Counted from the first letter of the stretch, positions 43,271-64,000 are shown. The stretch is 64,000 nucleotides of DNA from Convolutriloba macropyga (GCF_964194025.1 NC_134470.1:20088001-20152000), one strand, 5' to 3'. A program made the numbers and translations. The notes: a model not told the origin generated them from the sequence alone.

Positions 43271-44472
43271 CAAACTAAATAAAAACTGATAAAATTCTTT
43301 TTTAAACCTCGACTCTCTGATGAGGCGTTGTTGAATTTAATAAAAATTAAGAAAGAAATGTTTAAAAAACTCAAAAACACGAAAATGTGAAGAACTTGAA
43401 AGAAGCCAAATTCGAGCAAAACACAACTTCATAAAAAGATGAAAGTTAGCACGCATACAAGTCAAAATTTAAACTTTCGGGTTCAACTTGTTTTTTTTTA
43501 AAAAAAAACTAACTATCAAACAGTCACAAGAAATCCTAAAAAAATGAAATTTAATTTTAAAACCTTTACCAAACAAAACAAAAATAATTCCAAAGCTCCC
43601 TCTTGCAAAACTGACACCAATTGCGTGAAACCCTGTCGAGACAAAAACGCAGAGAGCAATATCTAATTGCAAAATCTGTATTTATGCAGTGATCCTCTGT
43701 AGAAGCATTCAGAATCAAGCAAGTTGCTCAACAAATATCGCTATCAAGATAAAATTGGAGACCTTATCAGACCTTCACCGCCAAAATGTAGACAGTAAAA
43801 ATGCAAAAACTCAATTTCATGATTTGGCGTATCTATGAGACTTTGTCAAAGTGGCAGCTAAAAGTTCCGAAAACCAACATACCAGTCAGATTGCCGGACA
43901 GCAGCCGCCATTGATTTCCATAACCTACATTGGGACTGACTGGATTTCGTACTTAGAATCCTGCTTCTTAAGGAGCAGATAAACGGATTAGCATCAATAC
44001 CAATGACAATTTGACCTGGTACCTAAATTTTCTTTCAATCGCAAACTTTGACTTTTGAAGCTCTAAGACGAATGCACAGCAACTCAATGCCCTCGGGCAG
44101 GACTATTTTACTATTGCTTTGCGAAAGATAAAAATGTTGGTGCGAAAAACCGCATAAAAAGATCAACCGAATTAAAAAGAATTGCAGCAAACTTTGCGTG
44201 GGAGCAAGCTTTGCAATCAAAGTATAATAATTAAGGGTTGAAATTTTTTGAAAAACAAGTGATCAAAGGGTCACAAGGTGACCAGACCTGACAAAAAAAT
44301 GAAAACAATCGACTAACGTCAGGCGAATTGCCCTAAAACGACTGCCGAGCGGTCGACTTCGTTAATAGTTAGCTGCAGCTTAGATGGGCCAGCTTAAGCG
44401 TAATTGAGAGGGTAAGCTCAGAGTAGTAAGAAATAGGGGGGTCTGCCGCACACTTTGTGACACATTTCTACC

Positions 44473-44560
44473 AAAACCTTTTCCCCACCCAGATTCGAAC
44501 CTACGCGTGCGAAATTAATTTTTTTTTGGTTTCAAAGACGTAACCACTGCGCCACGGGAC
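44473..44560 (-). ncRNA. tRNA-like RNA polymerase III unit in the Polinton terminal region
   Basis: The minus strand reads GTCCCG-TGGCGCAGTGG (A box)...GCGTA-GGTTCGAATC (B box)-TGGGTGGGGAAAAGG-TTTT (terminator). The anticodon arm is replaced by an A-rich stretch. Confidence 0.55.
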
Positions 44561-44950
44561 ACATATTTCCTTTAGCTTCAAAACCAACTTTATTAAGCCA
44601 CAGCTATATGGCTAAGCGGCTATGATAATCAAAACTAAATCAGCGTGAAATATTTGAATGTTATTTATATTCAAAGATATATTCAAAGACGCGTTTAATA
44701 TTTAAATGTTAGTTAAAGATATTTAAATGGTCTCAACAAAATGAATGTTAGTTATATTCAAATATATTTTAATGTGCCCACAACAAAATCCCATTGAAAA
44801 CATTCAAAGATATAAGCTCACAAGATAATGAATGATGATACAGATATTGGAATGTTCCCACAACAAAATCGAATTATCGCGCATTTTAGTTATATATTCT
44901 AGTTTTGCGTCTTATGAACTACAAACAAATACCCATTTAGTTTAGTGTAC

Positions 44951-45616
44951 TTAATCATCCTCCTCCTCTCTTCTTTCTGCCTCCATTATCCGTCTTTTCC
45001 TCGGAATATCTCTCTCTCGATTATTTCCCTCGTTTTCCTCCAGAACAGCACTAGAACTTGTACTGGGATGATTATCTTCACCCTCGCCCTGACTTTCATT
45101 TGCTCTTCTGATTTCTTTTGCCATGTAGCTCCGGTTGTAAATCATCAACCCACAGAACTCTCTCAAACTGAGAGTTGTCATCTTCCTTTCCCAGTGATCC
45201 CCGATTTTTGTGAATCTCTTGAAATGGAAATAAATTGAGCGATAGGCCCTGTCCGGGTTGTAGATCTGGAAGCTCAGTCGGCAGTATGATTTGCCGCAAA
45301 CCATGTAGTCCTGAATTACCTCGCAACGGGATGCATCTGTTTCCATTGATTCGCATGGGGTCATCGTTGTTTTCTTGTGTGTTCGGAAACTCAGTTGTCC
45401 ATAGGCAATAATGGACTCCAATTGCTCTGAGTAGAAAATGTCAAGCATTCTATGGAACACTCCTTTAGGCAACTCTACAGATTGCTCGAGCGCTTGTGTC
45501 GATTCTACTCTTTTTTCGAATTTCACGTTGTCTTCAGTTGAAGATATCAGAAGGCTTTTGGCGCAATGTCTGATTGAATACAAATAGACCTGGTCAAAGT
45601 CGTCTTTGGTAGCCAT
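44951..45616 (-). CDS. Polinton accessory protein, 221 aa, putative PC4-like ssDNA-binding fold with acidic/basic tail
   Basis: Intact ATG ORF. YCRLSFQIY..IYFHFKRF..WERKMTTLSLREFCGL resembles the PC4 pattern (YVSV.EF..IDIREY..KGISL..EQW..L). The C-terminus carries an NLS-like PRKRR. The fold call is tentative. Confidence 0.7.
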   Translation of the reverse strand: MATKDDFDQVYLYSIRHCAKSLLISSTEDNVKFEKRVESTQALEQSVELPKGVFHRMLDIFYSEQLESIIAYGQLSFRTHKKTTMTPCESMETDASRCEVIQDYMVCGKSYCRLSFQIYNPDRAYRSIYFHFKRFTKIGDHWERKMTTLSLREFCGLMIYNRSYMAKEIRRANESQGEGEDNHPSTSSSAVLEENEGNNRERDIPRKRRIMEAERREEEDD

Positions 45617-45705
45617 CGTTCAAGATAATATGTTGTTTGAGAATTGGTGAGATTTAATTAACTGGTGAGATTTAAATTCAACTGTTAAGACTGCAACAAT
45701 AGACT

Positions 45706-46071
45706 GAAAGTGAATTTGGCGATGGATTTTGTCAACGCAAACTATCGTGATAACACAAAATTTATAGCTGACAGTGCGTGAACAAAATTTTATGATTTTT
45801 AAATAAAATCTGTTATGTAATCCAGATAAATAATTGAAGGGAGACGCATCGTCTCAGGGAGAAAGTTTGCCTCATTGATAACAATTTGGAAAGTGAATTT
45901 GGCGATGGATTTTGTCAACGCAAACTATCGTGATAACACAAAATTTATAGCTGACAGTGCGTGAACAAAATTTTATGATTTTTAAATAAAATCTGTTATG
46001 TAATCCACATAAATATTTGAAGGGAGACGCATCGTCTCAGGGAGAAAGTTTGCCTCATTGATAACAATTTG
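45706..46071 (+). repeat. 183-bp near-perfect direct duplication upstream of the 221-aa ORF
   Basis: 45706-45888 and 45889-46071 differ at about two positions. Each contains the hairpin GAGACG-CAT-CGTCTC. Confidence 0.95.
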
Positions 46072-46219
46072 AAAAACAGAATTTAACAGCAAATTGAAAT
46101 TTTATAGTTAAAAACGACTCGAAAGGTATAAAAGCTCTATTTTCTTCAAAACGAAAGAACAAGGTATCTGACTAGTAATGTAATGAACAAGGTATCTGAC
46201 TACTAATGTAATGACAGTA

Positions 46220-49200
46220 TTGCTCGCTCCTTTAAGGAAATTTGTTATTGAAGTTGTGCATGATATGAGAAAGCAGAAGTTTTAAAATTTGGAAAACCAC
46301 CAAATTCCATATAAATGAACTTTTTGGTTGTGTCTGTAGATAGGTTTTCTAAGCAATTTCAGTTAGAGTTCTCTTCTCTGTGACAAGTACTTTGCTGAGA
46401 AGACTCAAAACAGACACAGGGTCCATTTTGGAAATCTTAAATCAGATGGCGGAAAATGATTGCAGCTAGACGTTTTCCTAATTCTGGTTTTCCCAAAGTG
46501 ATGCACGTCTCCTTATGCCACGATCCGAGTCCAACTTTGGAACTTAGAGGTTCTCTAGCTGTTGGTTTTGAAAAATTAATTCAAAAGCCAAGAACAGCTC
46601 CTAGCTCTATGCTATAACGCAAGGTCCACATCGGACGAAGAGCAATGATGGACTAAGTTCTGAGTTTGCACACTTTTAGAAAATGTATTCATGTTTCGAA
46701 AAAATCCAAATTTTTCAAAATCATCCAAATTTTTCAAAATCACCCAGCTAGAGAACCTTTGCAAAAATTCTAAAATTTTCGAAAAAATCCAAATTTTTCA
46801 AAATCACCCAAAGGGTCCCCCCTTTGCAAATTTTCGAAAAAATCCAAATTTTTCAAAATCACCCAAATTTTTCAAAATCACCCAGCTAGAGAACCTTTGC
46901 AAAAATTCTAAAATTTTCGAAAAAATCCAAATTTTTCAAAATCACCCAAAGGGTCCCCCCTTTGCAAATTTTCGAAAATTTTCGAAAAAATCCAATTTTT
47001 CAAAATCACCCAAAGGGTCCCCCCTTTGCAAATTTTCGAAAAAATCCAAATTTTTCAAAATCACCCAAAGGGTCCCCCCTTTGCAAATTTTCGAAATCCA
47101 AATTTTTCAAAATCAGCCAAAGAGTCCCCCCTTTGCAAATTTCCGAAAATTTTCGAAAAAATCCAAATTTTTCAAAATCACCCAAAGGGTCCCCCCTTTG
47201 CAAATTTTTGAAAAAATCCAAATTTTTCAAAATCACCCAGCTAGAGAACCTTTGCAAAAATTCTAAAATTTTCGAAAAAATCCAAATTTTTCAAAATCAC
47301 CCAAAGGGTCCCCCCTTTGCAAATTTTCGAAAATTTTCGAAAAAATCCAAATTTTTCAAAATCACCCAAAATTTTCAAAATCACCCAGCTAGAGAACCTT
47401 TGCAAAAATTCTAAAATTTTCGAAAAAATCCAAATTTTTCAAAATCACCAAAAGGGTCCACCCTTTTCAAATTTTCGAAAATTTTCGAAAAAATCCAAAT
47501 TTTTCAAAATCACCCAAAGGGTCCCCCCTTTGCAAATTTTCGAAAAAATCCAAATTTTTCAAAATCACCCAAAGGGTCCCCCCTTTGCAAATTTTCGAAA
47601 TCCAAATTTTTCAAAATCAGCCAAAGAGTCCCCCCTTTGCAAATTTCCGAAAATTTTCGAAAAAATCCAAATTTTTCAAAATCATCCAAAGGGTCCCCCC
47701 TTTGCAAATTTTTGAAAAAATCCAAATTTTTCAAAATCACCCAGCTAGAGAACCTTTGCAAAAATTCTAAAATTTTCGAAAAAATCCAAATTTTTCAAAA
47801 TCACCCAAAGGGTCCCCCCTTTGCAAATTTTCGAAAATTTTCGAAAAAATCCAAATTTTTCAAAATCACCCAAAATTTTCAAAATCACCCAGCTAGAGAA
47901 CCTTTGCAAAAATTCTAAAATTTTCGAAAAAATCCAAATTTTTCAAAATCACCAAAAGGGTCCACCCTTTGCAAATTTTCGAAAATTTTCGAAAAAATCC
48001 AAATTTTTCAAAATCACCCAAAGGGTCCCCCCTTTGCAAATTTTCGAAAAAATCCAAATTTTTCAAAATCACCCAAAGGGTCCCCCCTTTGCAAATTTTC
48101 GAAATCCAAATTTTTCAAAATCAGCCAAAGAGTCCCCCCTTTGCTCGCTCCTTTAAGGAAATTTGTTATTGAAGTTGTGCATGATATGAGAAAGCAGAAG
48201 TTTTAAAATTTGGAAAACCACCAAATTCCATATAAATGAACTTTTTGGTTGTGTCTGTAGATAGGTTTTCTAAGCAATTTCAGTTAGAGTTCTCTTCTCT
48301 GTGACAAGTACTTTGCTGAGAAGACTCAAAACAGACACAGGGTCCATTTTGGAAATCTTAAATCAGATGGCGGAAAATGATTGCAGCTAGACGTTTTCCT
48401 AATTCTGGTTTTCCCAAAGTGATGCACGTCTCCTTATGCCACGATCCGAGTCCAACTTTGGAACTTAGAGGTTCTCTAGCTGTTGGTTTTGAAAAATTAA
48501 TTCAAAAGCCAAGAACAGCTCCTAGCTCTATGCTATAACGCAAGGTCCACATCGGACGAAGAGCAATGATGGACTAAGTTCTGAGTTTGCACACTTTTAG
48601 AAAATGTATTCATGTTTCGAAAAAATCCAAATTTTTCAAAATCATCCAAATTTTTCAAAATCACCCAGCTAGAGAACCTTTGCAAAAATTCTAAAATTTT
48701 CGAAAAAATCCAAATTTTTCAAAATCACCCAAAGGGTCCCCCCTTTGCAAATTTTCGAAAAAATCCAAATTTTTCAAAATCACCCAAATTTTTCAAAATC
48801 ACCCAGCTAGAGAACCTTTGCAAAAATTCTAAAATTTTCGAAAAAATCCAAATTTTTCAAAATCACCCAAAGGGTCCCCCCTTTGCAAATTTTCGAAAAT
48901 TTTCGAAAAAATCCAATTTTTCAAAATCACCCAAAGGGTCCCCCCTTTGCAAATTTTCGAAAAAATCCAAATTTTTCAAAATCACCCAAAGGGTCCCCCC
49001 TTTGCAAATTTTCGAAATCCAAATTTTTCAAAATCAGCCAAAGAGTCCCCCCTTTGCAAATTTCCGAAAATTTTCGAAAAAATCCAAATTTTTCAAAATC
49101 ACCCAAAGGGTCCCCCCTTTGCAAATTTTTGAAAAAATCCAAATTTTTCAAAATCACCCAGCTAGAGAACCTTTGCAAAAATTCTAAAATTTTCGAAAAA

Positions 49201-51405
49201 ATCCAAATTTTTCAAAATCACCCAAAGGGTCCCCCCTTTGCAAATTTTCGAAAATTTTCGAAAAAATCCAAATTTTTCAAAATCACCCAAAATTTTCAAA
49301 ATCACCCAGCTAGAGAACCTTTGCAAAAATTCTAAAATTTTCGAAAAAATCCAAATTTTTCAAAATCACCAAAAGGGTCCACCCTTTGCAAATTTTCGAA
49401 AAAATCCAAATTTTTCAAAATCACCCAAAGGGTCCCCCCTTTGCAAATTTTCGAAAAAATCCAAATTTTTCAAAATCACCCAAAGGGTCCCCCCTTTGCA
49501 AATTTTCGAAATCCAAATTTTTCAAAATCAGCCAAAGAGTCCCCCCTTTGCTCGCTCCTTTAAGGAAATTTGTTATTGAAGTTGTGCATGATATGAGAAA
49601 GCAGAAGTTTTAAAATTTGGAAAACCACCAAATTCCATATAAATGAACTTTTTGGTTGTGTCTGTAGATAGGTTTTCTAAGCAATTTCAGTTAGAGTTCT
49701 CTTCTCTGTGACAAGTACTTTGCTGAGAAGACTCAAAACAGACACAGGGTCCATTTTGGAAATCTTAAATCAGATGGCGGAAAATGATTGCAGCTAGACG
49801 TTTTCCTAATTCTGGTTTTCCCAAAGTGATGCACGTCTCCTTATGCCACGATCCGAGTCCAACTTTGGAACTTAGAGGTTCTCTAGCTGTTGGTTTTGAA
49901 AAATTAATTCAAAAGCCAAGAACAGCTCCTAGCTCTATGCTATAACGCAAGGTCCACATCGGACGAAGAGCAATGATGGACTAAGTTCTGAGTTTGCACA
50001 CTTTTAGAAAATGTATTCATGTTTCGAAAAAATCCAAATTTTTCAAAATCATCCAAATTTTTCAAAATCACCCAGCTAGAGAACCTTTGCAAAAATTCTA
50101 AAATTTTCGAAAAAATCCAAATTTTTCAAAATCACCCAAAGGGTCCCCCCTTTGCAAATTTTCGAAAAAATCCAAATTTTTCAAAATCACCCAAATTTTT
50201 CAAAATCACCCAGCTAGAGAACCTTTGCAAAAATTCTAAAATTTTCGAAAAAATCCAAATTTTTCAAAATCACCCAAAGGGTCCCCCCTTTGCAAATTTT
50301 CGAAAATTTTCGAAAAAATCCAAATTTTTCAAAATCACCCAAATTTTTCAAAATCACCCAGCTAGAGAACCTTTGCAAAAATTCTAAAATTTTCGAAAAA
50401 ATCCAAATTTTTCAAAATCACCCAAAGGGTCCCCCCTTTGCAAATTTTCGAAAATTTTCGAAAAAATCCAATTTTTCAAAATCACCCAAAGGGTCCCCCC
50501 TTTGCAAATTTTCGAAAAAATCCAAATTTTTCAAAATCACCCAAAGGGTCCCCCCTTTGCAAATTTTCGAAATCCAAATTTTTCAAAATCAGCCAAAGAG
50601 TCCCCCCTTTGCAAATTTCCGAAAATTTTCGAAAAAATCCAAATTTTTCAAAATCACCCAAAATTTTCAAAATCACCCAGCTAGAGAACCTTTGCAAAAA
50701 TTCTAAAATTTTCGAAAAAATCCAAATTTTTCAAAATCACCAAAAGGGTCCACCCTTTGCAAATTTTCGAAAATTTTCGAAAAAATCCAAATTTTTCAAA
50801 ATCACCCAAAGGGTCCCCCCTTTGCAAATTTTCGAAAAAATCCAAATTTTTCAAAATCACCCAAAGGGTCCCCCCTTTGCAAATTTTCGAAATCCAAATT
50901 TTTCAAAATCAGCCAAAGAGTCCCCCCTTTGCTCGCTCCTTTAAGGAAATTTGTTATTGAAGTTGTGCATGATATGAGAAAGCAGAAGTTTTAAAATTTG
51001 GAAAACCACCAAATTCCATATAAATGAACTTTTTGGTTGTGTCTGTAGATAGGTTTTCTAAGCAATTTCAGTTAGAGTTCTCTTCTCTGTGACAAGTACT
51101 TTGCTGAGAAGACTCAAAACAGACACAGGGTCCATTTTGGAAATCTTAAATCAGATGGCGGAAAATGATTGCAGCTAGACGTTTTCCTAATTCTGGTTTT
51201 CCCAAAGTGATGCACGTCTCCTTATGCCACGATCCGAGTCCAACTTTGGAACTTAGAGGTTCTCTAGCTGTTGGTTTTGAAAAATTAATTCAAAAGCCAA
51301 GAACAGCTCCTAGCTCTATGCTATAACGCAAGGTCCACATCGGACGAAGAGCAATGATGGACTAAGTTCTGAGTTTGCACACTTTTAGAAAATGTATTCA
51401 TGTTT
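46220..51405 (+). repeat. Higher-order repeat: four copies of a ~475-bp cassette separated by satellite blocks
   Basis: The cassette ttgctcgctcctttaagg...aaatgtattcatgtt starts at 46220, 48141, 49548 and 50929 (periods 1921, 1407, 1381). The copies appear identical by eye. Confidence 0.95.
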
Positions 51406-54400
51406 CGAAAAAATCCAAATTTTTCAAAATCACCCAAATTTTTCAAAATCACCCAGCTAGAGAACCTTTGCAAAAATTCTAAAATTTTCGAAAAAATCCA
51501 AATTTTTCAAAATCACCCAAAGGGTCCCCCCTTTGCAAATTTTCGAAAATTTTCGAAAAAATCCAAATTTTTCAAAATCACCCAAATTTTTCAAAATCAC
51601 CCAGCTAGAGAACCTTTGCAAAAATTCTAAAATTTTCGAAAAAATCCAAATTTTTCAAAATCACCCAAAGGGTCCCCCCTTTGCAAATTTTCGAAAATTT
51701 TCGAAATCCAAATTTTTCAAAATCAGCCACAGAGTCCCCCCTTTGCAAATTTTCGAAAATTTTCGAAAAAATCCAAATTTTTCAAAATCACCCAAAGGGT
51801 CCCCCCTTTGCAAATTTTCGAAAATTTTCGAAAAAATCCAAATTTTTCAAAATCACCCAAATTTTTTAAAATCACCCAGCTAGAGAACCTTTGCAAAAAT
51901 TCTAAAATTTTCGAAAAAATCCAAATTTTCCAAAATCACCCAAAGGGTCCCCCCTTTGCAAATTTTCGAAAATTTTCGAAAAAATCCAAATTTTTCAAAA
52001 TCACCCAAAGGGTCCCCCCTTTGCAAATTTTCGAAAATTTTCGAAATCCAAATTTTTCAAAATCAGCCAAAGAGTCCCCCCTTTGCAAATTTTCGAAAAT
52101 TTTCGAAAAAATCCAAATTTTTCAAAATCACCCAAAAGGTCCCCCCTTTGCAAATTTTCGAAAAAATCCAAATTTTTCAAAATCACCCAAAGGGTCCCCC
52201 CTTTGCAAATTTTCGAAAAAATCCAAATTTTTCAAAATCACCCAAAGGGTCCCCCCTTTGCAAATTTCCGAAAATTTTCGAAAAAATCCAAATTTTTCAA
52301 AATCACCCAAAGGGTCCCCCCTTTGCAAATTTCCGAATTTTTTCGAAAAAATCCAAATTTTTCAAAATCACCCAAATTTTTTAAAATCACCCAGCTAGAG
52401 AACCTTTGCAAAAATTCTAAAATTTTCGAAAAAATCCAAATTTTTCAAAATCACCCAAAGGGTCCCCCCTTTGCAAATTTTCGAAAATTTTCGAAATCCA
52501 AATTTTTCAAAATCAGCCAAAGAGTCCCCCCTTTGCAAATTTTCGAAAATTTTCGAAAAAATCCAAATTTTTCAAAATCACCCAAAGGGTCCCCCCTTTG
52601 CAAATTTTCGAAAATTTTCGAAATCCAAATTTTTCAAAATCAGCCAAAGAGTCCCCCCTTTGCAAATTTTCGAAAATTTTCGAAAAAATCCAAATTTTTC
52701 AAAATCACCCAAAGGGTCCCCCCTTTGCAAATTTTCGAAAAAATCCAAATTTTTCAAAATCACCCAAAGGGTCCCCCCCTTTGCAAATTTTCGAAAAAAT
52801 CCAAATTTTTCAAAATCACCCAGAGGGTCCCCCCTTTGCAAATTTTCGAAAAAATCCAAATTTTTCAAAATCACCCAAAGGGTCCCCCCTTTGCAAATTT
52901 TCGAAAAAATCCAAATTTTTCAAAATCACCCAAAGAGTCCCCCCTTTGCAAATTTTCGAAAATTTTCGAAAAAATCCAAATTTTTCAAAATCACCCAAAG
53001 GGTCCCCCCTTTGCAAATTTTCGAAAATTTTCGAAATCCAAATTTTTCAAAATCAGCCAAAGAGTCCCCCCTTTGCAAATTTCCGAATTTTTTCGAAAAA
53101 ATCCAAATTTTTCAAAATCACCCAGAGGGTCCCCCCTTTGCAAATTTTCGAAAAAATCCAAATTTTTCAAAATCACCCAAAGGGTCCCCCCTTTGCAAAT
53201 TTTCGAAAAAATCCAAATTTTTCAAAATCACCCAAAGGGTCCCCCCCTTTGCAAATTTTCGAAAAAATCCAAATTTTTCAAAATCAGCCAAAGGGTCCCC
53301 CCTTTGCAAATTTTCGAAAAAATCCAAATTTTTCAAAATCACCCAAAGGGTCCCCCCCTTTGCAAATTTTCGAAAAAATCCAAATTTTTCAAAATCACCC
53401 AGAGGGTCCCCCCTTTGCAAATTTTCGAAAAAATCCAAATTTTTCAAAATCACCCAAAGGGTCCCCCCTTTGCAAATTTTCGAAAAAATCCAAATTTTTC
53501 AAAATCACCCAGAGGGTCCCCCCTTTGCAAATTTTCGAAAAAATCCAAATTTTTCAAAATCACCCAAAGGGTCCCCCCTTTGCAAATTTTCGAAAAAATC
53601 CAAATTTTTCAAAATCACCCAAAGGGTCCCCCCCTTTGCAAATTTTCGAAAAAATCCAAATTTTTCAAAATCAGCCAAAGGGTCCCCCCTTTGCAAATTT
53701 TCGAAAAAATCCAAATTTTTCAAAATCACCCAAAGGGTCCCCCCCTTTGCAAATTTTCGAAAAAATCCAAATTTTTCAAAATCACCCAGAGGGTCCCCCC
53801 TTTGCAAATTTTCGAAAAAATCCAAATTTTTCAAAATCACCCAAAGGGTCCCCCCTTTGCAAATTTTCGAAAATTTTCGAAAAAATCCAAATTTTTCAAA
53901 ATCACCCAAAGGGTCCCCCCTTTGCAAATTTTCGAAAATTTTCGAAATCCAAATTTTTCAAAATCAGCCAAAGAGTCCCCCCTTTGCAAATTTTCGAAAA
54001 TTTTCGAAAAAATCCAAATTTTTCAAAATCACCCAAAGGGTCCCCCCTTTGCAAATTTCCGAAAATTTTCGAAAAAATCCAAATTTTTCAAAATCACCCA
54101 AAGGGTCCCCCCTTTGCAAATTTCCGAATTTTTTCGAAAAAATCCAAATTTTTCAAAATCACCCAAATTTTTTAAAATCACCCAGCTAGAGAACCTTTGC
54201 AAAAATTCTAAAATTTTCGAAAAAATCCAAATTTTTCAAAATCACCCAAAGGGTCCCCCCTTTGCAAATTTTCGAAAATTTTCGAAATCCAAATTTTTCA
54301 AAATCAGCCAAAGAGTCCCCCCTTTGCAAATTTTCGAAAATTTTCGAAAAAATCCAAATTTTTCAAAATCACCCAAAGGGTCCCCCCTTTGCAAATTTTC

Positions 54401-57400
54401 GAAAATTTTCGAAATCCAAATTTTTCAAAATCAGCCAAAGAGTCCCCCCTTTGCAAATTTTCGAAAATTTTCGAAAAAATCCAAATTTTTCAAAATCACC
54501 CAAAGGGTCCCCCCTTTGCAAATTTTCGAAAAAATCCAAATTTTTCAAAATCACCCAAAGGGTCCCCCCCTTTGCAAATTTTCGAAAAAATCCAAATTTT
54601 TCAAAATCACCCAGAGGGTCCCCCCTTTGCAAATTTTCGAAAAAATCCAAATTTTTCAAAATCACCCAAAGGGTCCCCCCTTTGCAAATTTTCGAAAAAA
54701 TCCAAATTTTTCAAAATCACCCAAAGAGTCCCCCCTTTGCAAATTTTCGAAAATTTTCGAAAAAATCCAAATTTTTCAAAATCACCCAAAGGGTCCCCCC
54801 TTTGCAAATTTTCGAAAATTTTCGAAATCCAAATTTTTCAAAATCAGCCAAAGAGTCCCCCCTTTGCAAATTTCCGAATTTTTTCGAAAAAATCCAAATT
54901 TTTCAAAATCACCCAGAGGGTCCCCCCTTTGCAAATTTTCGAAAAAATCCAAATTTTTCAAAATCACCCAAAGGGTCCCCCCTTTGCAAATTTTCGAAAA
55001 AATCCAAATTTTTCAAAATCACCCAAAGGGTCCCCCCCTTTGCAAATTTTCGAAAAAATCCAAATTTTTCAAAATCAGCCAAAGGGTCCCCCCTTTGCAA
55101 ATTTTCGAAAAAATCCAAATTTTTCAAAATCACCCAAAGGGTCCCCCCCTTTGCAAATTTTCGAAAAAATCCAAATTTTTCAAAATCACCCAGAGGGTCC
55201 CCCCTTTGCAAATTTTCGAAAAAATCCAAATTTTTCAAAATCACCCAAAGGGTCCCCCCTTTGCAAATTTTCGAAAAAATCCAAATTTTTCAAAATCACC
55301 CAGAGGGTCCCCCCTTTGCAAATTTTCGAAAAAATCCAAATTTTTCAAAATCACCCAAAGGGTCCCCCCTTTGCAAATTTTCGAAAAAATCCAAATTTTT
55401 CAAAATCACCCAAAGGGTCCCCCCCTTTGCAAATTTTCGAAAAAATCCAAATTTTTCAAAATCACCCAGAGGGTCCCCCCTTTGCAAATTTTCGAAAAAA
55501 TCCAAATTTTTCAAAATCACCCAAAGGGTCCCCCCTTTGCAAATTTTCGAAAAAATCCAAATTTTTCAAAATCACCCAAAGGGTCCCCCCCTTTGCAAAT
55601 TTTCGAAAAAATCCAAATTTTTCAAAATCAGCCAAAGGGTCCCCCCTTTGCAAATTTTCGAAAAAATCCAAATTTTTCAAAATCACCCAAAGGGTCCCCC
55701 CCTTTGCAAATTTTCGAAAAAATCCAAATTTTTCAAAATCACCCAGAGGGTCCCCCCTTTGCAAATTTTCGAAAAAATCCAAATTTTTCAAAATCACCCA
55801 AAGGGTCCCCCCTTTGCAAATTTTCGAAAATTTTCGAAAAAATCCAAATTTTTCAAAATCACCCAAAGGGTCCCCCCTTTGCAAATTTTCGAAAATTTTC
55901 GAAATCCAAATTTTTCAAAATCAGCCAAAGAGTCCCCCCTTTGCAAATTTTCGAAAATTTTCGAAAAAATCCAAATTTTTCAAAATCACCCAAAGGGTCC
56001 CCCCTTTGCAAATTTTCGAAAAAATCCAAATTTTTCAAAATCACCCAAAGGGTCCCCCCTTTGCAAATTTTCGAAAAAATCCAAATTTTTCAAAATCACC
56101 CAAAGGGTCCCCCCTTTGCAAATTTCCGAAAATTTTCGAAAAAATCCAAATTTTTCAAAATCACCCAAAGGGTCCCCCCTTTGCAAATTTCCGAATTTTT
56201 TCGAAAAAATCCAAATTTTTCAAAATCACCCAGAGGGTCCCCCCTTTGCAAATTTTCGAAAAAATCCAAATTTTTCAAAATCACCCAAAGGGTCCCCCCT
56301 TTGCAAATTTTCGAAAAAATCCAAATTTTTCAAAATCACCCAAAGGGTCCCCCCTTTGCAAATTTCCGAATTTTTTCGAAAAAATCCAAATTTTTCAAAA
56401 TCACCCAGAGGGTCCCCCCTTTGCAAATTTTCGAAAAAATCCAAATTTTTCAAAATCAGCCAAAGGGTCCCCCCTTTGCAAATTTTCGAAAAAATCCAAA
56501 TTTTTCAAAATCACCCAAAGGGTCCCCCCCTTTGCAAATTTTCGAAAAAATCCAAATTTTTCAAAATCACCCAGAGGGTCCCCCCTTTGCAAATTTTCGA
56601 AAAAATCCAAATTTTTCAAAATCACCCAAAGGGTCCCCCCTTTGCAAATTTTCGAAAAAATCCAAATTTTTCAAAATCACCCAAAGGGTCCCCCCTTTGC
56701 AAATTTCCGAATTTTTTCGAAAAAATCCAAATTTTTCAAAATCACCCAGAGGGTCCCCCCTTTGCAAATTTTCGAAAAAATCCAAATTTTTCAAAATCAC
56801 CCAAAGGGTCCCCCCTTTGCAAATTTTCGAAAAAATCCAAATTTTTCAAAATCACCCAAAGGGTCCCCCCTTTGCAAATTTTCGAAAAAATCCAAATTTT
56901 TCAAAATCACCCAAAGGGTCCCCCCTTTGCAAATTTTCGAAAAAATCCAAATTTTTCAAAATCACCCAAAGGGTCCCCCCTTTGCAAATTTTCGAAAAAA
57001 TCCAAATTTTTCAAAATCACCCAAAGGGTCCCCCCTTTGCAAATTTTCGAAAAAATCCAAATTTTTCAAAATCACCCAAAGGGTCCCCCCTTTGCAAATT
57101 TCCGAATTTTTTCGAAAAAATCCAAATTTTTCAAAATCACCCAGAGGGTCCCCCCTTTGCAAATTTTCGAAAAAATCCAAATTTTTCAAAATCACCCAAA
57201 GGGTCCCCCCTTTGCAAATTTCCGAAAATTTTCGAAAAAATCCAAATTTTTCAAAATCACCCAAAGGGTCCCCCCTTTGCAAATTTCCGAATTTTTTCGA
57301 AAAAATCCAAATTTTTCAAAATCACCCAGAGGGTCCCCCCTTTGCAAATTTTCGAAAAAATCCAAATTTTTCAAAATCACCCAAAGGGTCCCCCCTTTGC

Positions 57401-57608
57401 AAATTTTCGAAAAAATCCAAATTTTTCAAAATCACCCAAAGGGTCCCCCCTTTGCAAATTTTCGAAAAAATCCAAATTTTTCAAAATCACCCAAAGGGTC
57501 CCCCCTTTGCAAATTTTCGAAAAAATCCAAATTTTTCAAAATTACCCAAAGGGTCCCCCCTTTGCAAATTTTCAAAAAAATCCAAAATTTTTCAAAATCG
57601 CCCAAAGG
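46694..57608 (+). repeat. 55-bp satellite array with length variants inside the Polinton
   Basis: Monomer AAAATCACCCAAAGGGTCCCCCCTTTGCAAATTTTCGAAAAAATCCAAATTTTTC. Variants include +10-bp TTTTCGAAAA, -3 bp, C7, a 19-bp short unit and a CAGCTAGAGAACC type. It is uninterrupted from ~51403 to 57608 and contains a 1791-bp internal duplication (52471 vs 54262). Confidence 0.98.
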
Positions 57609-57687
57609 AGAAGAAACTCTTAATCAGCATTGGGCGGATAACCACGGGGTCAACGGGCCATCGATTAACACTGAACGTGTGCAAGAA

Positions 57688-60600
57688 ATGGGCAATATGT
57701 CTCTCTTGAGTACAAAACAATCTGTTCGCGGTTTTTTTCAGACATTTCGATTTACTCTTGGGAATGAGCAGGTGGTCGATCCGTTCGAATACTTTGTGGC
57801 GAATGAAAGAGGTATCGTCAATTTTGTCAACAAACGGCTTGATTCAAGAACTATGAAATTTTCGGTATGTGTGCGTGTTGACTTCAGCAAACCAATATCC
57901 CTCGACAAAACTACTTCGTACTTCAACAGTGTTACAGAAACTGTTTCACGTTGTTTAAGTGAAGAAGAATTTTACCGACATGTTGACCAGATTCTCAATC
58001 AAATCAGTATATTTTGTACCGCCGGGAGCGGGTGGGTTATAGAAAGAATGGCTGTGTTCGATGTAAAAATTTGCAAGTACAGCCCAATGAGAGCAGCGAC
58101 CTATATACCTACTCCCAAAAAGATACAGAAACTAAGGAGAACTGTTTTGAACATTCAGAATCTTGATGACAGTTTGTGTTTCGTGTACTGTATCCTTGCT
58201 GCTCTCTTTCCTGTGAAAACTAATCAGCAACGTCCAAGTAGTTACAAAAGTCATTTGGGCGCCCTGTACTTCAATAAGAAGAAAATGCCAATGCCTTTAT
58301 CTGGTATTCCGGCTTTCGAAAAAAGCAACAATCTAGCAGTAAATGTCTATGCGCACGACGGTAATGAAATCTACCCTGCATATATTTCAAAGCAAAAACA
58401 AAATTCTAAAAAAATACATCTACTATTAATATCAAACGAAGAAAAGTCACACTACTGTCTCATCAAGAATTTGGACCGTCTGCTCAAGACGCTTCTGCGT
58501 TCAGATCGTACAGCATGTTCAAAGAATAATATCAGAAAATTTTGTGATCGATGCCTTCAAAGCATTGACAGGAACAAAATGACACAACACCGTCAGCTCT
58601 GTTTCGACCAAAGCCCATTGCTAATCCAAATGCCTGCCAGCTTGCAAATGGTACAATTCAGCAGCTACAACAAACAGACTAGATCTCCATTCGTTGTGTA
58701 TGCAGATTTGGAGGCGTTTGATGTGAAAAATGAGTCTTACGCTGACATGATTGACGATTATGGAGAAAATGTTTTGAACAGTTTCAACGCAGCAACGCTG
58801 CATATTGAAGATCAGTTTCCTTGTAGTTTTGGAGCTATTTTGATCGATATTAGGAGCGGAAAAGCAGAAAAACAAAAATTCTACCGCGGTAAAAATGTAA
58901 TAGCAACGTTGATGCAAACTCTAAGAGAGTGGACTCTCTGGGCATACGAAGAAAATCAGAAATTTAGGATACTGAATCTTGATTCTGCAAAAAAGTCGCA
59001 ACTTGTATCAAATTGGGGAGACCCCTGCTGTATCTGTGGTAAAAGTTTTGGAGACTCGGAGGATGACAAGGTTTTGCATCACTGTCATTTGACGGGAAGA
59101 GTTTATGGTGTCGCTCACAGCAAATGCAACATTGTGCACAGTGGGAAAATTTTTGCCTGTCTTCTTCCATAATCTATCCCGATATGACTCGCACCACATA
59201 ATAAAAAATCTGAAGCTCCAATCGGGGGAAGAGTTGAACGCAATAGCAAAAACAGACGAGACGTTTATTTCCTTTTCGGTTCGGGTACCAGTTGGAAGTT
59301 ACTTTGACAAAAGAGGATTAGTAAAAAATATCAAACACGATATTCGGTTTTTGGACAGCATTAATTTCATGGCGTCTAGTCTCGATGCACTTGCAAAAAC
59401 TTTAGACGAAAGTGATCTCCGCCTCTTAAAAGAAAGATTTCCTGTAGACACGAAAGAAAAATTTGATATGATCAGGAGGGAAGGTTTTTTTCTTTACAGC
59501 TACCTTGACTGCTCAGAGAAATTTGAAGCGTCTTTTCCGGAATATGGTTCCAACTGGATCAATACACTTTCTGGCAAACTTGAAGTTACACCAGAACAGT
59601 ACCAACAAGCTGTTGACGTTTACAAGATGATGAATTGTAAAAATTTTGGGGATTACCATGATTTTTATTTAACAGTTGACGTTTTTCTGCTTGCATGTGT
59701 CTTTGAAAAATTTCGAGATGTTTGCCTTGAGGTCTACAGGTTGGACCCAGCATGTTTTTACAGTGCGCCGAATCTCAGCTGGGATGCAATGCTTATTACC
59801 AAAGGAGTTGAATTGGAGCTTCTTCAAGAGTACGACATGTTGTTATTCTGTGAGAAAGCTATTCGTGGTGGCTTGAATGGCGTCGGTTCCTTGCGCTATT
59901 TCAAAGCCAATAATAAGTACCTTTCAGATTATAAAAGCAGTGAAGCTTCTGTTTTTGGGGCGTTCTTTGACGTCACTTCACTTTACGCTGGAACTATGAT
60001 GAAAAAACTGCCCATTGGTTCTTTTCAATGGGACGACACTCTAACAGTAGATGATATTGAGCATTTTGATTGCGATGGCGAATACGCTTTTTTCGTGGAA
60101 GTTGATCTCGAATATCCAACCGATTTGCACATTGATCATCAAGACCTACCATTGGCTCCCGAAAAACTTGTTATAGAATCTAGCTGGTTGTCTGATTACT
60201 GCTCTGACCTGAAGTCAAAACGATCTGCAAAAGTTCCAAAGCTCGTTGAGACTGTATTCGACAAAAAAAACTATATTTGTCACATCAAAAATCTACAATT
60301 TTATGTGGAAAAAGGACTCCAGATCACCAAAATTCACAAAGCGCTCAAATTTAAACAAACCAATTGGCTTTCTGTATACATCGAAAAAAACACGATGATG
60401 AGAAAAAGTGCCAAAAGTCCCTTTAAGAAAAATTTCTACAAACTAATGTCTAATGCTTGCTTTGGAAAAGAAATGGAAAATAAAAGAAATCGTCGTAAAA
60501 TTCATTTTGTTAGCGATGAGAAGGAAGCATCAAAGCTATCTAGAAAACCCAATTTCAAATCATTTGAGATTATAAGTGAATCTCTTTGCTCTGTCTCTAT

Positions 60601-61738
60601 GGCACAAAACAAAATTTTTTGGGATAAACCAACGCCAGTGGGCGCTGCGATTCTTGATTTGTCAAAATTGTCCTTGTACGGATTCCACTACAATGAGATG
60701 AAACCCCGATATGGAAAAAAGATTTTGGTAACATACAAAGACACAGATTCTCTTCTTTACCGAATAGAAACTGATGATTTTTATGAGGACATGAAAGAAT
60801 TTCAACACTTGCTTGATCTGTCCGACTACCCTACCGAGCATCCATTGTTCAACCCTGTCAATAAAAAAGTTCCTCTGACTATGAGGGATGAGCTCAATGG
60901 TCAGGTGATGGAGGAGGCTGTTTTGTTGCGATCAAAGTTGTATAGCATCAAGTATCAAGGTGGTGTGAAACAAAGTGCTAAGGGAGTGCAAAAAAGCGTT
61001 AAAAAAGCCTACATCATGACAAGTTTCTGAATTGTTTAAAGAGTCAGAGCGTAGAGAGGGCACCAATGACAAGAATAACCTCAGAGAAACATCAGATTTT
61101 TGTTATAATGACAAACAAAGTTGCCTTGAGTTGCTTCGATGATAAGAGATTCATTCTTGAACCAGGATTGGAAACCCTGCCACATGGTCACTTTTGGTTA
61201 AAGCAGAAGCCACCTAACAATGACCAAGCGTTATCCATTCCTGATGATGATGATGAGCAGACGTCTTTGAACAATTTTGATGAAAGCGAAGATGAGAATT
61301 TGTCGGACACAAACGAGAAACCATCTGACAAGAGCAGCGGGGCTGAACAATCGGAGGCCTTGGGCATCATTTCATCAACTCTTGACAGTTTTGGTAAGTT
61401 GCTTCATTTATAACACTGAACAATTGTTGCCGCTTCATTATAAATTTGACCAGTTTTTAAACCTTTTTGCAGAGGTGCCAGATCCAGGCTTTCTACCTCG
61501 TGACCTCCATGCTGACAGTGGCGATGCAGACATCGTCGATTGGAATGACTTGAGTGATGAAGAATATACAGTTGGCACCTCCTCCTTACCGCATAACCCC
61601 TTCATTGAGTACGAAGCTGTTGAATGTCATGAGGATGTTGAGACGGAGGAGGAGGGAGACGATGAGGAGGAGCTCAATGAAAGCGCGACAATCTTGCGTG
61701 CGCCCAAACGGAGGAGAACTGTAATCGACTCGGACTAA
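57688..61738 (+). pseudogene. Protein-primed family B DNA polymerase (pPolB) polyprotein, two frameshifts (~59135 and 61001-61006), one predicted intron (61394-61472)
   Basis: N-terminal terminal-protein-like region (GSGWVIE), vOTU-like NIQNLDDSLCF...HYCLI, ExoI YADLE, EndoVII/HNH-like CCICGK..HHCHLTG..AHSKCN, ExoII FHNLSRYD, polymerase motifs DVTSLY, KLMSNACFGK, YKDTDS and AKGV, and C-terminal DDKRFIL..TLPHGH. About 1320 aa if repaired and spliced. The frameshifts may be real decay or consensus errors. Confidence 0.93.
61394..61472 (+). other. Predicted 79-nt spliceosomal intron in the pPolB C-terminal extension
   Basis: G|GTAAGT donor and pyrimidine-rich ccttttTGCAG acceptor, with an AT-rich interior. 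Removal joins ORF 61066 in frame to ORF 61277 (..LDSF-E-VPDPG..). Confidence 0.8.
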
Positions 61739-61774: not shown

Positions 61775-62377
61775 TTATACAAGTGTAAGAGTATATTCAG
61801 TATTTAACCTACCATTAAAAAATCTTACAAGTCCAATCTCATTTATTAAATTTATGTTATCCAATTTTAATGCACAGCTCGCGCGAAATTGTTCAACATC
61901 AGAAAACACTGGGATCTTTTTCTTTTGAGGTGAACCGTTTTTAGTGAAGAACAAAATGGCAGCGTAAATGCAGTATAAACCGCATAAATTTGATGAAGCT
62001 GTTTGAACTGATGTTGATATTTCGTGCAAAACAAAATCTTTGCGATTATATAATCCTTGTAACCGAGTGTAAACATCTATAAAGAAAGCAAGTGGGATGC
62101 ATAGACTGTTCCAAATTATAATATTTTGGTACAACTTTTGTTTCAAGTTTTTGTTTGATTTGTTGTTCGCGGCCGCAGGAAATTTATAGTACTCGGGAAA
62201 AGCTAATAGTAAAATCCAATGTGTGCCTCGCGTCTTAGACTTAGATGTGTTGATTATTTGGAAAACGACAGCTTTTTTGTCAACTTTTGGAAAATTATCG
62301 GCCGACCACACGCCTCCAAACTCAAACTTGAGTTCCTTGAACTGTTTTACATTTGCAGCAATTGACACGCTATCAAT
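61775..62377 (-). CDS. Adenain-like (C5-type) maturation cysteine protease of the Polinton
   Basis: FGGVWSADNFP, IINTS...GTHW (catalytic His) and Q..SSNLCGLYC (oxyanion Gln, catalytic Cys). There is no in-frame ATG; ATT-GAT-AGC at 62377 sits where an ATG would be expected. Confidence 0.85.
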   Translation of the reverse strand: MDSVSIAANVKQFKELKFEFGGVWSADNFPKVDKKAVVFQIINTSKSKTRGTHWILLLAFPEYYKFPAAANNKSNKNLKQKLYQNIIIWNSLCIPLAFFIDVYTRLQGLYNRKDFVLHEISTSVQTASSNLCGLYCIYAAILFFTKNGSPQKKKIPVFSDVEQFRASCALKLDNINLINEIGLVRFFNGRLNTEYTLTLV

Positions 62378-62381
62378 TAGG

Positions 62382-63747: not shown

Positions 63748-64000
63748 TTAGGTAAATTTTAAATTTGCAAGGATATCCGCAGAGGAGGCCGAGAGGCGAC
63801 TGCTCTTTGTGGGTGATTTGGATGAAGTGGTTGCTTGTTGTTTTCGTTTTCTGTTGTTAATTTTTATCTTTTGTTGTTTGCCTGTAGCAACAACTTTTCC
63901 TCGCCCCCGGGCTTCCACCGTCGACGTTCCGCCAGCCCGCGCCAATCCGCCCGCGCCGTTCCGCCAGCCCGCGCCAATCCGCCCGCCCGCGCCGTTCCGC
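63748..64000 (-). CDS. 3' part of a basic Gly/Arg/Lys-rich putative core (DNA-condensing) protein; 5' end outside the window
   Basis: The frame is open to the window edge, ends in a basic tail (GRGK..KQQKIK..RKRK..ADIL) and stops 10 bp before the MCP ATG, where Polintons commonly carry a small basic gene. Confidence 0.55.
   Translation of the reverse strand, partial: RNGAGGRIGAGWRNGAGGLARAGGTSTVEARGRGKVVATGKQQKIKINNRKRKQQATTSSKSPTKSSRLSASSADILANLKFT
63926..64000. repeat. GC-rich 32/36-bp minisatellite
   Basis: gttccgccagcccgcgccaatccgcccgcgcc recurs at 63926, 63958 (36-bp variant) and 63994 (truncated by the window end). Confidence 0.85.

What the first reader, a model, noticed from the sequence alone, without database searches (positions are those of the whole stretch)
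46220..57608. Endogenous Polinton/adintovirus carrying an ~11.4-kb hierarchical satellite directly upstream of its polymerase
Seen: a nearly homogeneous 55-bp satellite with several nested repeat levels fills the space between the PC4-like gene and pPolB. The element already spans 19.6 kb in this window without its integrase, ATPase, penton or right TIR. Known: Polintons are usually ~15-25 kb. Inference: either the array is an expandable cis-element of the virus (origin, enhancer or packaging region, by analogy to palindromic baculovirus hr repeats), or it expanded after integration, with the provirus seeding a new host satellite and probably becoming too large to package.
Basis: partly seen in the sequence, partly recalled or inferred. 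Interest (0 to 1): 0.85.

Follow-up and report, generated by a model that had tools for sequence, protein, structure and literature searches.

The report
Polinton's short repeat blown up locally
A dead virus-like transposon (Polinton) in the genome of the acoel worm Convolutriloba macropyga carries a short tandem repeat just in front of its polymerase gene, and at this one chromosomal site the repeat has grown from about 0.5 kb to 8-11 kb, a clear but fairly ordinary case of a mobile element seeding a young satellite.

Summary
Window 46220-57608 is an 11,389-bp same-orientation array of about 150 units of 55/65 bp, with four 100%-identical copies of a 473-bp non-satellite block.

It lies inside a complete, TIR-bounded Polinton with a 6-bp TSD (window 44422 to window-equivalent 70987, 26.6 kb). 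The host is Convolutriloba macropyga, chromosome 3.

The repeat belongs to the element. Six of eight other insertions hold the same unit at the same place and in the same orientation, just 5' of pPolB, but only 0.4-1.4 kb of it. A 98%-identical sister copy is 15.9 kb, with one block and 0.7 kb of repeat.

The 50-bp core of the unit is about 98% identical between subfamilies whose remaining DNA is about 77% identical. That suggests the short array was a functional cis-element, probably regulatory.

The long array is a post-integration expansion at this locus. It is joined directly to a pPolB that has lost its 5' end, in a copy with several broken genes.

A second assembly of the same locus carries a 7.7-kb, three-block version, so the array is real, but its exact length is unsettled or polymorphic.

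No array was found outside Polintons. "PC4-like" is unverified.

This is a known kind of event (a transposon's internal repeat becoming a satellite) in a new kind of host element.

The parts
44422..44554 (.). Left terminal inverted repeat of the Polinton. Its partner lies outside the window at window-equivalent 70857-70987.
   Evidence: 134 bp, 93% inverted match. The 98% sister copy L002 starts and ends at exactly these ends. Flanking 6-bp duplication is 5/6 here and 6/6 in L002.
44951..45616 (-). It is lineage-specific and of unknown function.
   Evidence: Only close relatives come from C. macropyga contigs. No Pfam family even at E<=10. AF2 pLDDT 51. No significant Foldseek match.
45706..46075 (.). 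183-bp tandem duplication (2 copies, 98%) in the non-satellite part of the intergenic region. Sister copies L002 and L008 have one copy.
46220..57608 (+). The whole array: four [473-bp block + satellite] super-units, 11,389 bp. Satellite units are 55/65 bp, each with an AT-rich dyad and the GC-rich palindromic core.
46220..46692 (+). 473-bp non-satellite block, copy 1. This is the ancestral single-copy intergenic segment, present once in L002 and L008 at 97%.
48141..48613 (+). 473-bp block, copy 2 (100% identical).
49548..50020 (+). 473-bp block, copy 3 (100% identical).
50929..51401 (+). 473-bp block, copy 4 (100% identical).
51402..57608 (+). Longest uninterrupted satellite run (6.2 kb, about 100 units). 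It contains a 1.79-kb internal duplication.
57609..61206 (+). Protein-primed family-B DNA polymerase gene, broken: one 5' deletion (start codon and C2H2 zinc-finger N-terminus missing) and two interruptions of the reading frame.
   Evidence: 77% identity to the L005 ORF, which hits PF03175 at 1.9e-14. Endonuclease_7-like zinc motif. Piece and frame counts. Sister-copy N-terminus.
61775..62368 (-). Adenain-type cysteine protease ORF (197 aa, open).
   Evidence: PF00770 Peptidase_C5, 25.8 bits against a cut-off of 21.3.
62382..63737 (-). Major capsid protein, double jelly-roll (451 aa, open).
   Evidence: AF2 pLDDT 85. Foldseek matches Sputnik, PBCV-1 and mavirus MCPs at E about 1e-15. Adintovirus and adomavirus capsid proteins appear in BFVD. 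120 relatives, one named F54H12.2-like [C. macropyga].

Best explanation
The array is a runaway, post-integration expansion of a short tandem repeat that belongs to this Polinton lineage.

SHOWN
- In the lineage's other insertions, the divergent intergenic region holds 5-20 units (0.4-1.4 kb) of the same 55/65/66-bp unit. This region lies between a small leftward ORF and the rightward zinc-finger-pPolB gene.
- The units always point the same way as pPolB and end about 20-105 bp before its ATG.
- In the window's insertion the repeat, together with the adjoining 473-bp unique block, was amplified to 11.4 kb. The other assembly or haplotype of the same locus has 7.7 kb.
- The array's 3' end is joined directly to a pPolB lacking its 5' end.

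INFERRED
- The first [block+satellite] duplication used a 4-nt microhomology at the satellite/block joint.
- Later growth and reshuffling came from unequal exchange or replication slippage between the now repeated blocks and units. This would explain the 100%-identical blocks, the higher-order repeats and the two different array versions at one locus.
- The copy is immobile: pPolB, the integrase and one more gene are broken. The long array therefore serves nothing viral and is an incipient host satellite confined so far to this locus.
- The ancestral SHORT array was probably a functional cis-element of the active element. Most likely it was a promoter-proximal array of binding sites for a dimeric DNA-binding protein.
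- Three things point that way. Each unit carries two dyad symmetries. Position and orientation are fixed. The 50-bp core is about 98% conserved between subfamilies that are about 77% identical elsewhere.
For: Element and host
- The source is OZ077301.1 of GCA_964194025.3, C. macropyga.
- TIRs and TSD bound the element at 44422-70987.

Sister and diverged copies
- Sister copy L002 is collinear at 98% exactly between those ends, with unrelated flanks. It is 15.93 kb, with one block (97%) and 0.71 kb of satellite.
- L008 has 0.52 kb plus one block. L007 has 0.51 kb and L009 0.45 kb.
- L005 has 4.7 units of 66 bp, ending 23 bp before the zf-C2H2 pPolB ORF. L006 has 18.5 + 2.8 units.
- All units share pPolB's orientation except one inverted unit in L002.

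Conservation of the unit
- The window unit against L005/L006 units is 98.5% identical over the core 50 columns.
- The rest of the element is 76-78% identical, and the left non-coding DNA is not alignable.
- There are two dyads per unit; the DNA fold z-score is -4.25.

The same locus in a second assembly
- ctg33223 matches the left flank at 99.9% and the right flank at 98.7-99.2%.
- It has a 7.74-kb array with 3 blocks. It shares the same first 11 and last 15 units and 20 unit types, but has 5 private types and a different interior.
- Both versions share the same array/pPolB joint.

Decay and scarcity
- The unit is absent from the other 44 kb of the window and from all host flanks of 10 loci.
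- ORFs encoded by the array have close relatives only on the same-locus contig.
- There are no matches in IMG/VR or JGI metagenomes.
Against: - I could not scan the whole genome or the reads. 'One locus only' rests on 9 independent insertions and an indirect protein look-up.
- Two related copies (L011, L003) have no array, so it is dispensable or easily lost.
- L007 and L009 are mosaics: their left 1.7 kb is 89-90% identical against about 77% for the rest. Exchange between copies therefore happens and could mimic conservation.
- The conservation figure for L005/L006 rests on only 4 distinct units.
- Mean HiFi read length is about 8.1 kb (66.51 Gb / 8.21 M reads, PMC13650328). That is shorter than the 11.4-kb array, so the exact length and interior order could be partly assembler-dependent.
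- No expression or binding data exist. The regulatory role is inference only.
Confidence: 0.8

Rival explanations
1. The multi-kb array is an assembly artefact (over-expansion of a 0.5-1-kb repeat by the assembler).
For: Mean HiFi read length is about 8.1 kb, below the array length. Contig N50 is only 0.19 Mb and heterozygosity is 3.65% (PMC13650328). The two assemblies of the locus disagree, 11.4 kb against 7.7 kb.
Against: Two assemblies with different contig sets both give a multi-kb array with several blocks and the same ends. The shorter one is not a subset, since it has 5 private unit types. The longest exact repeat inside the array is 1,467 bp, well below read length, so the array is resolvable in principle.
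Confidence: 0.07
2. The long array is itself a working, expandable cis-element of the virus (origin, enhancer or packaging region). Copy number is then a selected viral trait, as with baculovirus hr regions.
For: The unit is strongly conserved, carries palindromes, and has a fixed position and orientation next to pPolB. Copy number varies 4-fold even among the short arrays.
Against: Only this locus has more than 1.4 kb. Here the array has replaced the 5' end of pPolB, and the copy has at least five further gene interruptions. The amplified unit includes a 473-bp block that is single-copy or absent elsewhere. There is a single site per element, unlike dispersed hr regions.
Confidence: 0.05
3. 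The unit is a host satellite or host regulatory repeat that an ancestor of these Polintons captured, and its conservation reflects the host copies.
For: I cannot scan the genome. Satellite families with TE homology are common (PMC4935994, PMC8268682).
Against: There are no copies of the 17- or 18-nt core anywhere outside the expected site, in 44 kb of window flank and in the host flanks of 10 loci. The site and orientation are the same in two subfamilies. No other contig has array-encoded ORFs.
Confidence: 0.05
4. The short arrays are neutral passengers. Their near-identity between subfamilies comes from recombination or gene conversion among copies, not from function. This concerns only the inferred cis-function and is compatible with the expansion story.
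For: L007 and L009 are clear mosaics. L011 and L003 lack the array yet otherwise look like ordinary family members. All sampled copies are decayed.
Against: In L005 and L006 the DNA on the left of the array is not detectably related to the window's, yet the unit core is 98.5% identical. Exchange would have had to be confined to the repeat itself. The variable part of the unit is a distinct ~10-15-bp linker, while both dyads are kept.
Confidence: 0.3

Closest known systems
Tetris foldback transposon and the emerging TIR-220 satellite of Drosophila virilis (PMC4079207); tandem-repeat-containing MITE DTC84 of the clam Donax trunculus (PMC3879986)
   Same: A short tandem repeat is a regular internal part of a mobile element and is amplified into long arrays. 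Copies show variable unit numbers.
   Different: Those are small non-autonomous DNA transposons, and their repeats have spread as arrays detached from the element. Here the carrier is a 15-kb virus-like Polinton. The long array was found at one locus only, is still inside the element, and has co-amplified a unique 473-bp block.
Satellite families with Polinton homology found in satellitome surveys (LmiSat34-299 of the locust, PMC4935994; CgiSat52 of the oyster, PMC8268682)
   Same: Satellite DNA with sequence similarity to Polintons has been recorded before.
   Different: Those are listed only as Repbase matches (for the locust, to a Polinton coding sequence), with long monomers and no locus anatomy. 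Here the source is a conserved non-coding promoter-proximal repeat, and both the ancestral and the expanded states are seen side by side.
Baculovirus homologous regions (hr), from general knowledge and not tested here
   Same: Tandem units, each with an imperfect palindrome, sit in non-coding DNA of a large dsDNA virus. The number of units varies.
   Different: hr regions occur at several dispersed sites per genome and have shown enhancer and origin activity. Here there is one site per element, no functional data and no sequence relation.
Polinton/Maverick elements and adintoviruses
   Same: The gene set (pPolB, integrase, DJR capsid, protease, A32-type ATPase), TIRs and a 6-bp TSD.
   Different: This copy is integrated and decayed, 26.6 kb instead of about 15-16 kb. 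The lineage's pPolB carries an N-terminal C2H2 zinc-finger region. My literature searches did not find that feature described for Polintons, but the search was limited.

Membership tests
Polinton/Maverick | Protein-primed family-B DNA polymerase | tested here: met
   The window ORF 59105-61030 gives no Pfam hit by itself. It is 77% identical over 437 aa to the L005 ORF, which hits PF03175 at 1.9e-14, above the cut-off. Sister copies have precomputed PF03175 hits.
Polinton/Maverick | Retroviral-type (rve) integrase | tested here: inconclusive
   It lies outside the window (window-equivalent 65474-66679) and is broken. The intact-looking L005 homologue scores 30.0 bits for PF00665 against a cut-off of 32.6, E 6.4e-7.
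Polinton/Maverick | Double jelly-roll major capsid protein | tested here: met
   AF2 pLDDT 85, pTM 0.84. Foldseek E 7e-16 to 2e-14 against Sputnik, PBCV-1 and mavirus MCPs, TM about 0.55-0.6. BFVD gives Adintovirus and adomavirus capsid proteins.
Polinton/Maverick | Adenain-type cysteine protease | tested here: met
   PF00770, 25.8 bits against a cut-off of 21.3.
Polinton/Maverick | FtsK/A32-type packaging ATPase | tested here: met
   L001:5330-6046 (just past the window end) hits Pox_A32 at 1.5e-8, 34.8 bits against a cut-off of 22.8.
Polinton/Maverick | Penton (minor capsid) protein | not tested
   Candidate ORFs between the MCP and the integrase have homologues in L005 but no Pfam hit. They were not modelled.
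Polinton/Maverick | Terminal inverted repeats and 6-bp target-site duplication | tested here: met
   TIR of 134 bp at 93%. TSD is 5/6 in the window copy and 6/6 in L002.
Adintovirus (free virus) | Genome not flanked by host DNA | tested here: not met
   The element is integrated in chromosome 3 with a TSD and host flanks on both sides. Several of its genes are broken.
Host satellite DNA family | Long head-to-tail arrays | tested here: met
Host satellite DNA family | Arrays at many loci, independent of the source element | tested here: inconclusive
   None was found in the 11 loci, in the window flank, or through array-encoded ORFs. No whole-genome scan was possible.
TE-internal tandem repeat turned satellite (Tetris / DTC84 type) | A short array is a regular internal part of most copies of the element | tested here: met
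   6 of 8 other independent insertions carry it: L002, L005, L006, L007, L008, L009. L003 and L011 do not.
TE-internal tandem repeat turned satellite (Tetris / DTC84 type) | The same units are amplified into arrays much longer than in the element | tested here: met
   11.4 kb (window) and 7.7 kb (L010) against 0.4-1.4 kb elsewhere.
Baculovirus-hr-like enhancer/origin repeats | Imperfect palindrome in each unit | tested here: met
   There are two dyads per unit. Fold energy is -19.1 against -9.5 kcal/mol for shuffles, z -4.25.
Baculovirus-hr-like enhancer/origin repeats | Several dispersed repeat regions per genome | tested here: not met
   There is one site per element in all copies. L006 has two nearby runs.
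Baculovirus-hr-like enhancer/origin repeats | Enhancer or origin activity | not testable with these tools
   No functional data are available.
PC4 / Whirly / PUR-type ssDNA-binding fold (221-aa ORF) | Recognisable PC4-type domain | tested here: inconclusive
   No Pfam family at E<=10. The single-sequence model has pLDDT 51, with a strands-then-helix segment. Foldseek's best E is 0.035. Pur-alpha, WHY1, MRP1/2 and a phage T5 PC4 homologue appear among non-significant hits.

The most novel reading that the evidence does not exclude
The short two-dyad repeat is a conserved, dedicated cis-element of an animal Polinton lineage, bound by an element-encoded protein. Candidates are the C2H2 zinc-finger N-terminus fused to pPolB or the small divergently transcribed ORF. 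The repeat would control polymerase expression or internal replication or packaging functions, making it a Polinton counterpart of viral enhancer/origin repeats. Its intrinsic instability would make such elements recurrent seeds of new satellites.
Probability: 0.3. Interest if true: 0.6.

Novelty: new member of a known kind. Interest (0 to 1): 0.4.

Why it matters
Almost nothing is known about the non-coding control regions of animal Polintons. This locus gives a clean before-and-after pair: a 15.9-kb copy with 0.7 kb of repeat, and a 26.6-kb copy with 7.7-11.4 kb.

Three things follow from that pair:
- A specific 55/65-bp two-dyad unit next to pPolB is the best-conserved DNA of the lineage.
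- Such a repeat can explode into a satellite-like array inside a dead provirus, taking a unique block with it.
- The array keeps changing between haplotypes or assemblies.

This is useful for annotating Polinton size outliers, for studies of satellite birth, and as a pointer to a candidate regulatory element. It does not change any general picture, because transposon-internal repeats turning into satellites is an established theme.

Tried and rejected
- Exact look-up of the 221-aa ORF product: not on record.
- Homologue search for the 221-aa ORF: only 2 clusters, both from this species. No alignment deep enough for a good model was possible, and the single-sequence AF2 model was poor.
- PDB sequence searches with the pPolB ORF and with the capsid profile: nothing meaningful.
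- The unit's 30-mer in IMG/VR and in JGI metagenomes: 0 matches.
- TIR against repeat unit: only short AT-rich words and no real similarity. The array is therefore not an internal copy of the termini.
- The giant + strand ORFs over the array (up to 1,846 aa) are mechanical. The unit has no stop codon in any sense frame and almost no TA dinucleotide. I reject a coding reading.
- L003 (73% related) and L011 (77%) have no array.

1. I stopped, used it in no tool, give no letters here, and draw no conclusion from it.
The run table therefore rests partly on a consensus string. The conclusions are independently covered by TRF, BLAST with natural window DNA and the exact natural 17-mer. Later scripts used natural copies only.


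Full report
1. WHAT IS THERE

TRF reports a continuous repeat field from 46694 to 57608, with periods of 55, 65, 111, 138 and 148 bp. One row alone covers 51970-57608 (97.8 copies of 55 bp).

Cutting the region after each CCTTTGC gives 156 pieces of 30 sequence types. There are 55 pieces of 55 bp, 49 of 65 bp, and smaller classes of 52, 56, 62 and 83 bp. The commonest 55-mer occurs 37 times verbatim. All units point the same way, and the 18-nt palindromic core occurs 83 times on the + strand and never on the - strand or elsewhere in the window.

Each unit has three parts: two related 19-bp AT-rich sub-repeats, which together form an AT-rich dyad; a GC-rich palindrome (7-bp arms, 4-nt spacer); and a variable linker. 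A natural dimer folds as DNA at -19.1 kcal/mol against -9.5 for shuffles, z = -4.25.

A 473-bp sequence that is not satellite occurs four times, at 46220, 48141, 49548 and 50929. The copies are 100% identical, and each is followed by 0.9-1.4 kb of satellite. After the last copy there is 6.2 kb. That last run contains a 1.79-kb duplication.

The refinement is that the array is a hierarchy of [block + satellite] super-units rather than a plain 55-bp satellite.

The huge + strand ORFs are mechanical. The unit has no stop codon in any sense frame, and the last 6.2 kb holds only 14 TA dinucleotides.

2. WHERE IT IS

An exact look-up of the capsid ORF places the window on OZ077301.1 of GCA_964194025.3. 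By the coordinates of L001, the window is 20,088,001-20,152,000 in forward orientation. The genome note identifies that assembly as Convolutriloba macropyga chromosome 3 (PMC13650328). A cluster member named for that species lies in the same assembly.

The look-up also gave 9.7 kb past the window end.

- Window 44422-44554 has an inverted partner at window-equivalent 70857-70987 (93%).
- The ends read AGTAG...CTACT.
- The flanking 6-mers match 5/6 here and 6/6 in a sister copy.

The element therefore spans 44422-70987, or 26.6 kb.

Its genes are:
- a 221-aa ORF (-);
- pPolB (+), 77% identical to a relative that hits PF03175 at 1.9e-14;
- an adenain-type protease;
- a 451-aa capsid protein whose model (pLDDT 85) matches the double jelly-roll capsids of Sputnik, PBCV-1 and mavirus at E about 1e-15 and Adintovirus and adomavirus proteins in BFVD;
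- beyond the window, an integrase homologue and an A32-type ATPase.

This is a Polinton.

The copy is decayed. pPolB has one 5' deletion and two interruptions of the frame. The integrase has at least two interruptions, and one further gene at least one. The capsid, protease, ATPase and 221-aa ORFs are open (counts only).

3. THE REPEAT BELONGS TO THE ELEMENT

I fetched nine other places through capsid and 221-aa relatives.

Subfamily A (about 98% identical to the window copy):
- L002 is collinear with the window at 98%, exactly from TIR to TIR, with unrelated flanks. It is therefore an independent insertion. It is 15.93 kb long.
- Between its 220-aa ORF and pPolB it has the same intergenic DNA (98-99%), ONE 473-bp block (97%) and 0.71 kb of the same satellite. 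About 330 bp of unique DNA follows, containing the pPolB ATG and C2H2 zinc fingers.
- L008 is a left-end fragment with one block and 0.52 kb of satellite. It breaks off inside the satellite.

Subfamily B (76-78% identical to the window right of the array):

| Copy | Array |
|---|---|
| L005 | 4.7 units of 66 bp, ending 23 bp before the zinc-finger pPolB ORF |
| L006 | 18.5 + 2.8 units |
| L007 | 0.51 kb |
| L009 | 0.45 kb |
| L011 | none |

L003 (73% identical) also has none.

In every copy the units have the orientation of pPolB, apart from one inverted unit in L002 that creates a ~50-nt-arm palindrome.

The unit is the best-conserved DNA of the lineage. Against L005/L006 the core 50 columns are 98.5% identical to a natural window unit. 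The left non-coding DNA of those copies is not detectably related to the window's. The variable positions cluster in the ~10-15-bp linker.

Nothing like the unit occurs in the other 44 kb of the window or in the host flanks of the loci.

4. THE LONG FORM IS A LOCAL EXPANSION

Only this chromosomal site has more than 1.4 kb.

The window array ends directly against pPolB sequence that, in L002 and L005, lies some 70 codons into the gene. The start codon and zinc fingers are gone. The window also has a private 183-bp duplication just left of the array.

The satellite-to-block joints are the same in all three cases and share 4 nt with the original left edge of the block. I infer one microhomology-mediated duplication, followed by unequal exchange between the repeated blocks and units. 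The 100% identity of the blocks argues that this is recent or ongoing.

5. IS IT AN ASSEMBLY ARTEFACT?

A second assembly (ENA ERZ25071359, contig ctg33223; L004 and L010) covers the same locus. The left flank is 99.9% identical and the right flank 98.7-99.2%, including host DNA beyond the right TIR.

Its array is 7.74 kb with three blocks and 104 pieces. It shares the first 11 pieces, the last 15 pieces and 20 unit types with the window. It also has 5 private unit types and a different interior; the window has 9 private types. It is therefore not a collapsed subset.

With 3.65% heterozygosity reported for the specimen, two haplotypes are the simplest reading, but I cannot prove it.

The mean HiFi read (about 8.1 kb, from 66.51 Gb in 8.21 M reads) is shorter than 11.4 kb. 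The longest exact repeat in the array is only 1,467 bp, so the array can be assembled in principle. I take a multi-kb array as real and its exact length as unsettled.

6. IS IT A HOST SATELLITE?

I could not scan the genome, so I used an indirect test. The protein collection holds ORFs that gene callers placed on such arrays. A 140-aa array-encoded ORF has close relatives only on ctg33223, which is the same locus. The unit's 30-mer is absent from IMG/VR and from JGI metagenomes.

So no array outside a Polinton is known. 'Seeding a new host satellite' is at most at its first step.

7. MECHANISM AND FUNCTION

Shown:
- a lineage-intrinsic short array at a fixed site and orientation;
- a local expansion with loss of the pPolB 5' end;
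- decay of the copy;
- two array versions at one locus.

Inferred:
- unequal exchange or slippage as the motor;
- a cis-regulatory role for the short array in the once-active element.

The second inference rests on the conservation, the two dyads per unit and the position 20-105 bp before the pPolB ATG, in a divergent intergenic region.

An origin or packaging role cannot be excluded. There is no similarity to the TIRs.

The mosaic structure of L007 and L009, and the array-less L011 and L003, keep a neutral-passenger reading alive at about 0.3.

8. COMPARISON WITH WHAT IS KNOWN

The event matches the established route from transposon-internal tandem repeats to satellites, as in Tetris in D. 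virilis (PMC4079207) and DTC84 in Donax (PMC3879986).

Satellites with Polinton homology have been listed in satellitome surveys (PMC4935994, PMC8268682), but without locus anatomy. A Polinton paper I checked does not mention tandem repeats. My searches found no description of Polinton promoter-proximal repeats or of a zinc-finger pPolB.

The hr analogy holds for the palindromic units. It fails for dispersed multiplicity and is untested for function.

The 'PC4-like' label has no sequence support. It has only non-significant fold hints from a poor model.

9. VERDICT

The feature is real. It is a new member of a known kind. Interest is moderate: 0.4 overall, and higher (0.6) if the short array proves to be a dedicated Polinton control element, at probability about 0.3.

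10. SLIPS

One was a motif of a human virus recalled from memory in my reasoning, which I did not use. The other was a TRF consensus line typed as a k-mer probe.

Noticed in passing
L002:15620-15836 (-), L005:15437-16369 (-), also L007, L009, L011: The pPolB of this lineage starts with a C2H2 zinc-finger region (zf-C2H2_4 at 2.8e-8 in L005). It also has an Endonuclease VII-like zinc motif further in (window 57622-59172, PF02945 at 2.5e-5). My limited literature searches did not find a zinc-finger N-terminus described for Polinton polymerases.
   Followed up: partly
L002:15969-16116: One satellite unit is inverted in the sister copy. This gives near-perfect palindromes with ~50-nt arms, pivoting on the unit's own palindromic core.
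   Followed up: partly
L008:8573-9591: This is a left-end fragment of the element (TIR, small ORF, block, 0.5 kb of satellite) that stops inside the satellite. The repeat may be a preferred breakpoint.
   Followed up: no
L007 and L009 against window 44483-46186: These are mosaic copies. The left 1.7 kb is 89-90% identical to the window element, while the rest is 71-82%. That indicates recombination between Polinton subfamilies.
   Followed up: partly
window 45706-46075: A 183-bp tandem duplication lies just left of the array and is private to this locus. L002 and L008 have one copy.
   Followed up: yes
window 46220-57608, + strand: The unit has no stop codon in any sense frame and almost no TA dinucleotide (14 in 6.2 kb), while keeping about one CpG per unit. 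This produces mechanical ORFs of up to 1,846 aa, one of which runs in frame into pPolB.
   Followed up: partly
window 6249-6636 and 23424-23849: Two small foldback or MITE-like structures have 102-nt inverted arms (92% and 75%) that are themselves built of 15-16-bp tandem repeats.
   Followed up: no
window 29662-30345 (+): An open 227-aa ORF has two CCCH zinc fingers (PF00642 at 6.5e-14). It is probably a host tandem-CCCH RNA-binding protein gene or exon.
   Followed up: no
window 24744-26734: This is another dispersed repeat of the host. It recurs at 78-97% identity in the flanks of L003, L007, L009 and L011.
   Followed up: no
window 63925-64000: A GC-rich 18/32-bp tandem repeat lies just upstream of the capsid gene, at the window edge.
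   Followed up: no
L002 against window 62044-62531: The 98% sister copy lacks the protease gene through one deletion, and its capsid C-terminus differs. All sampled copies of the lineage have at least one broken gene.
   Followed up: partly
window 8702-8901: A run of 200 N (assembly gap). I left it untouched.
   Followed up: no
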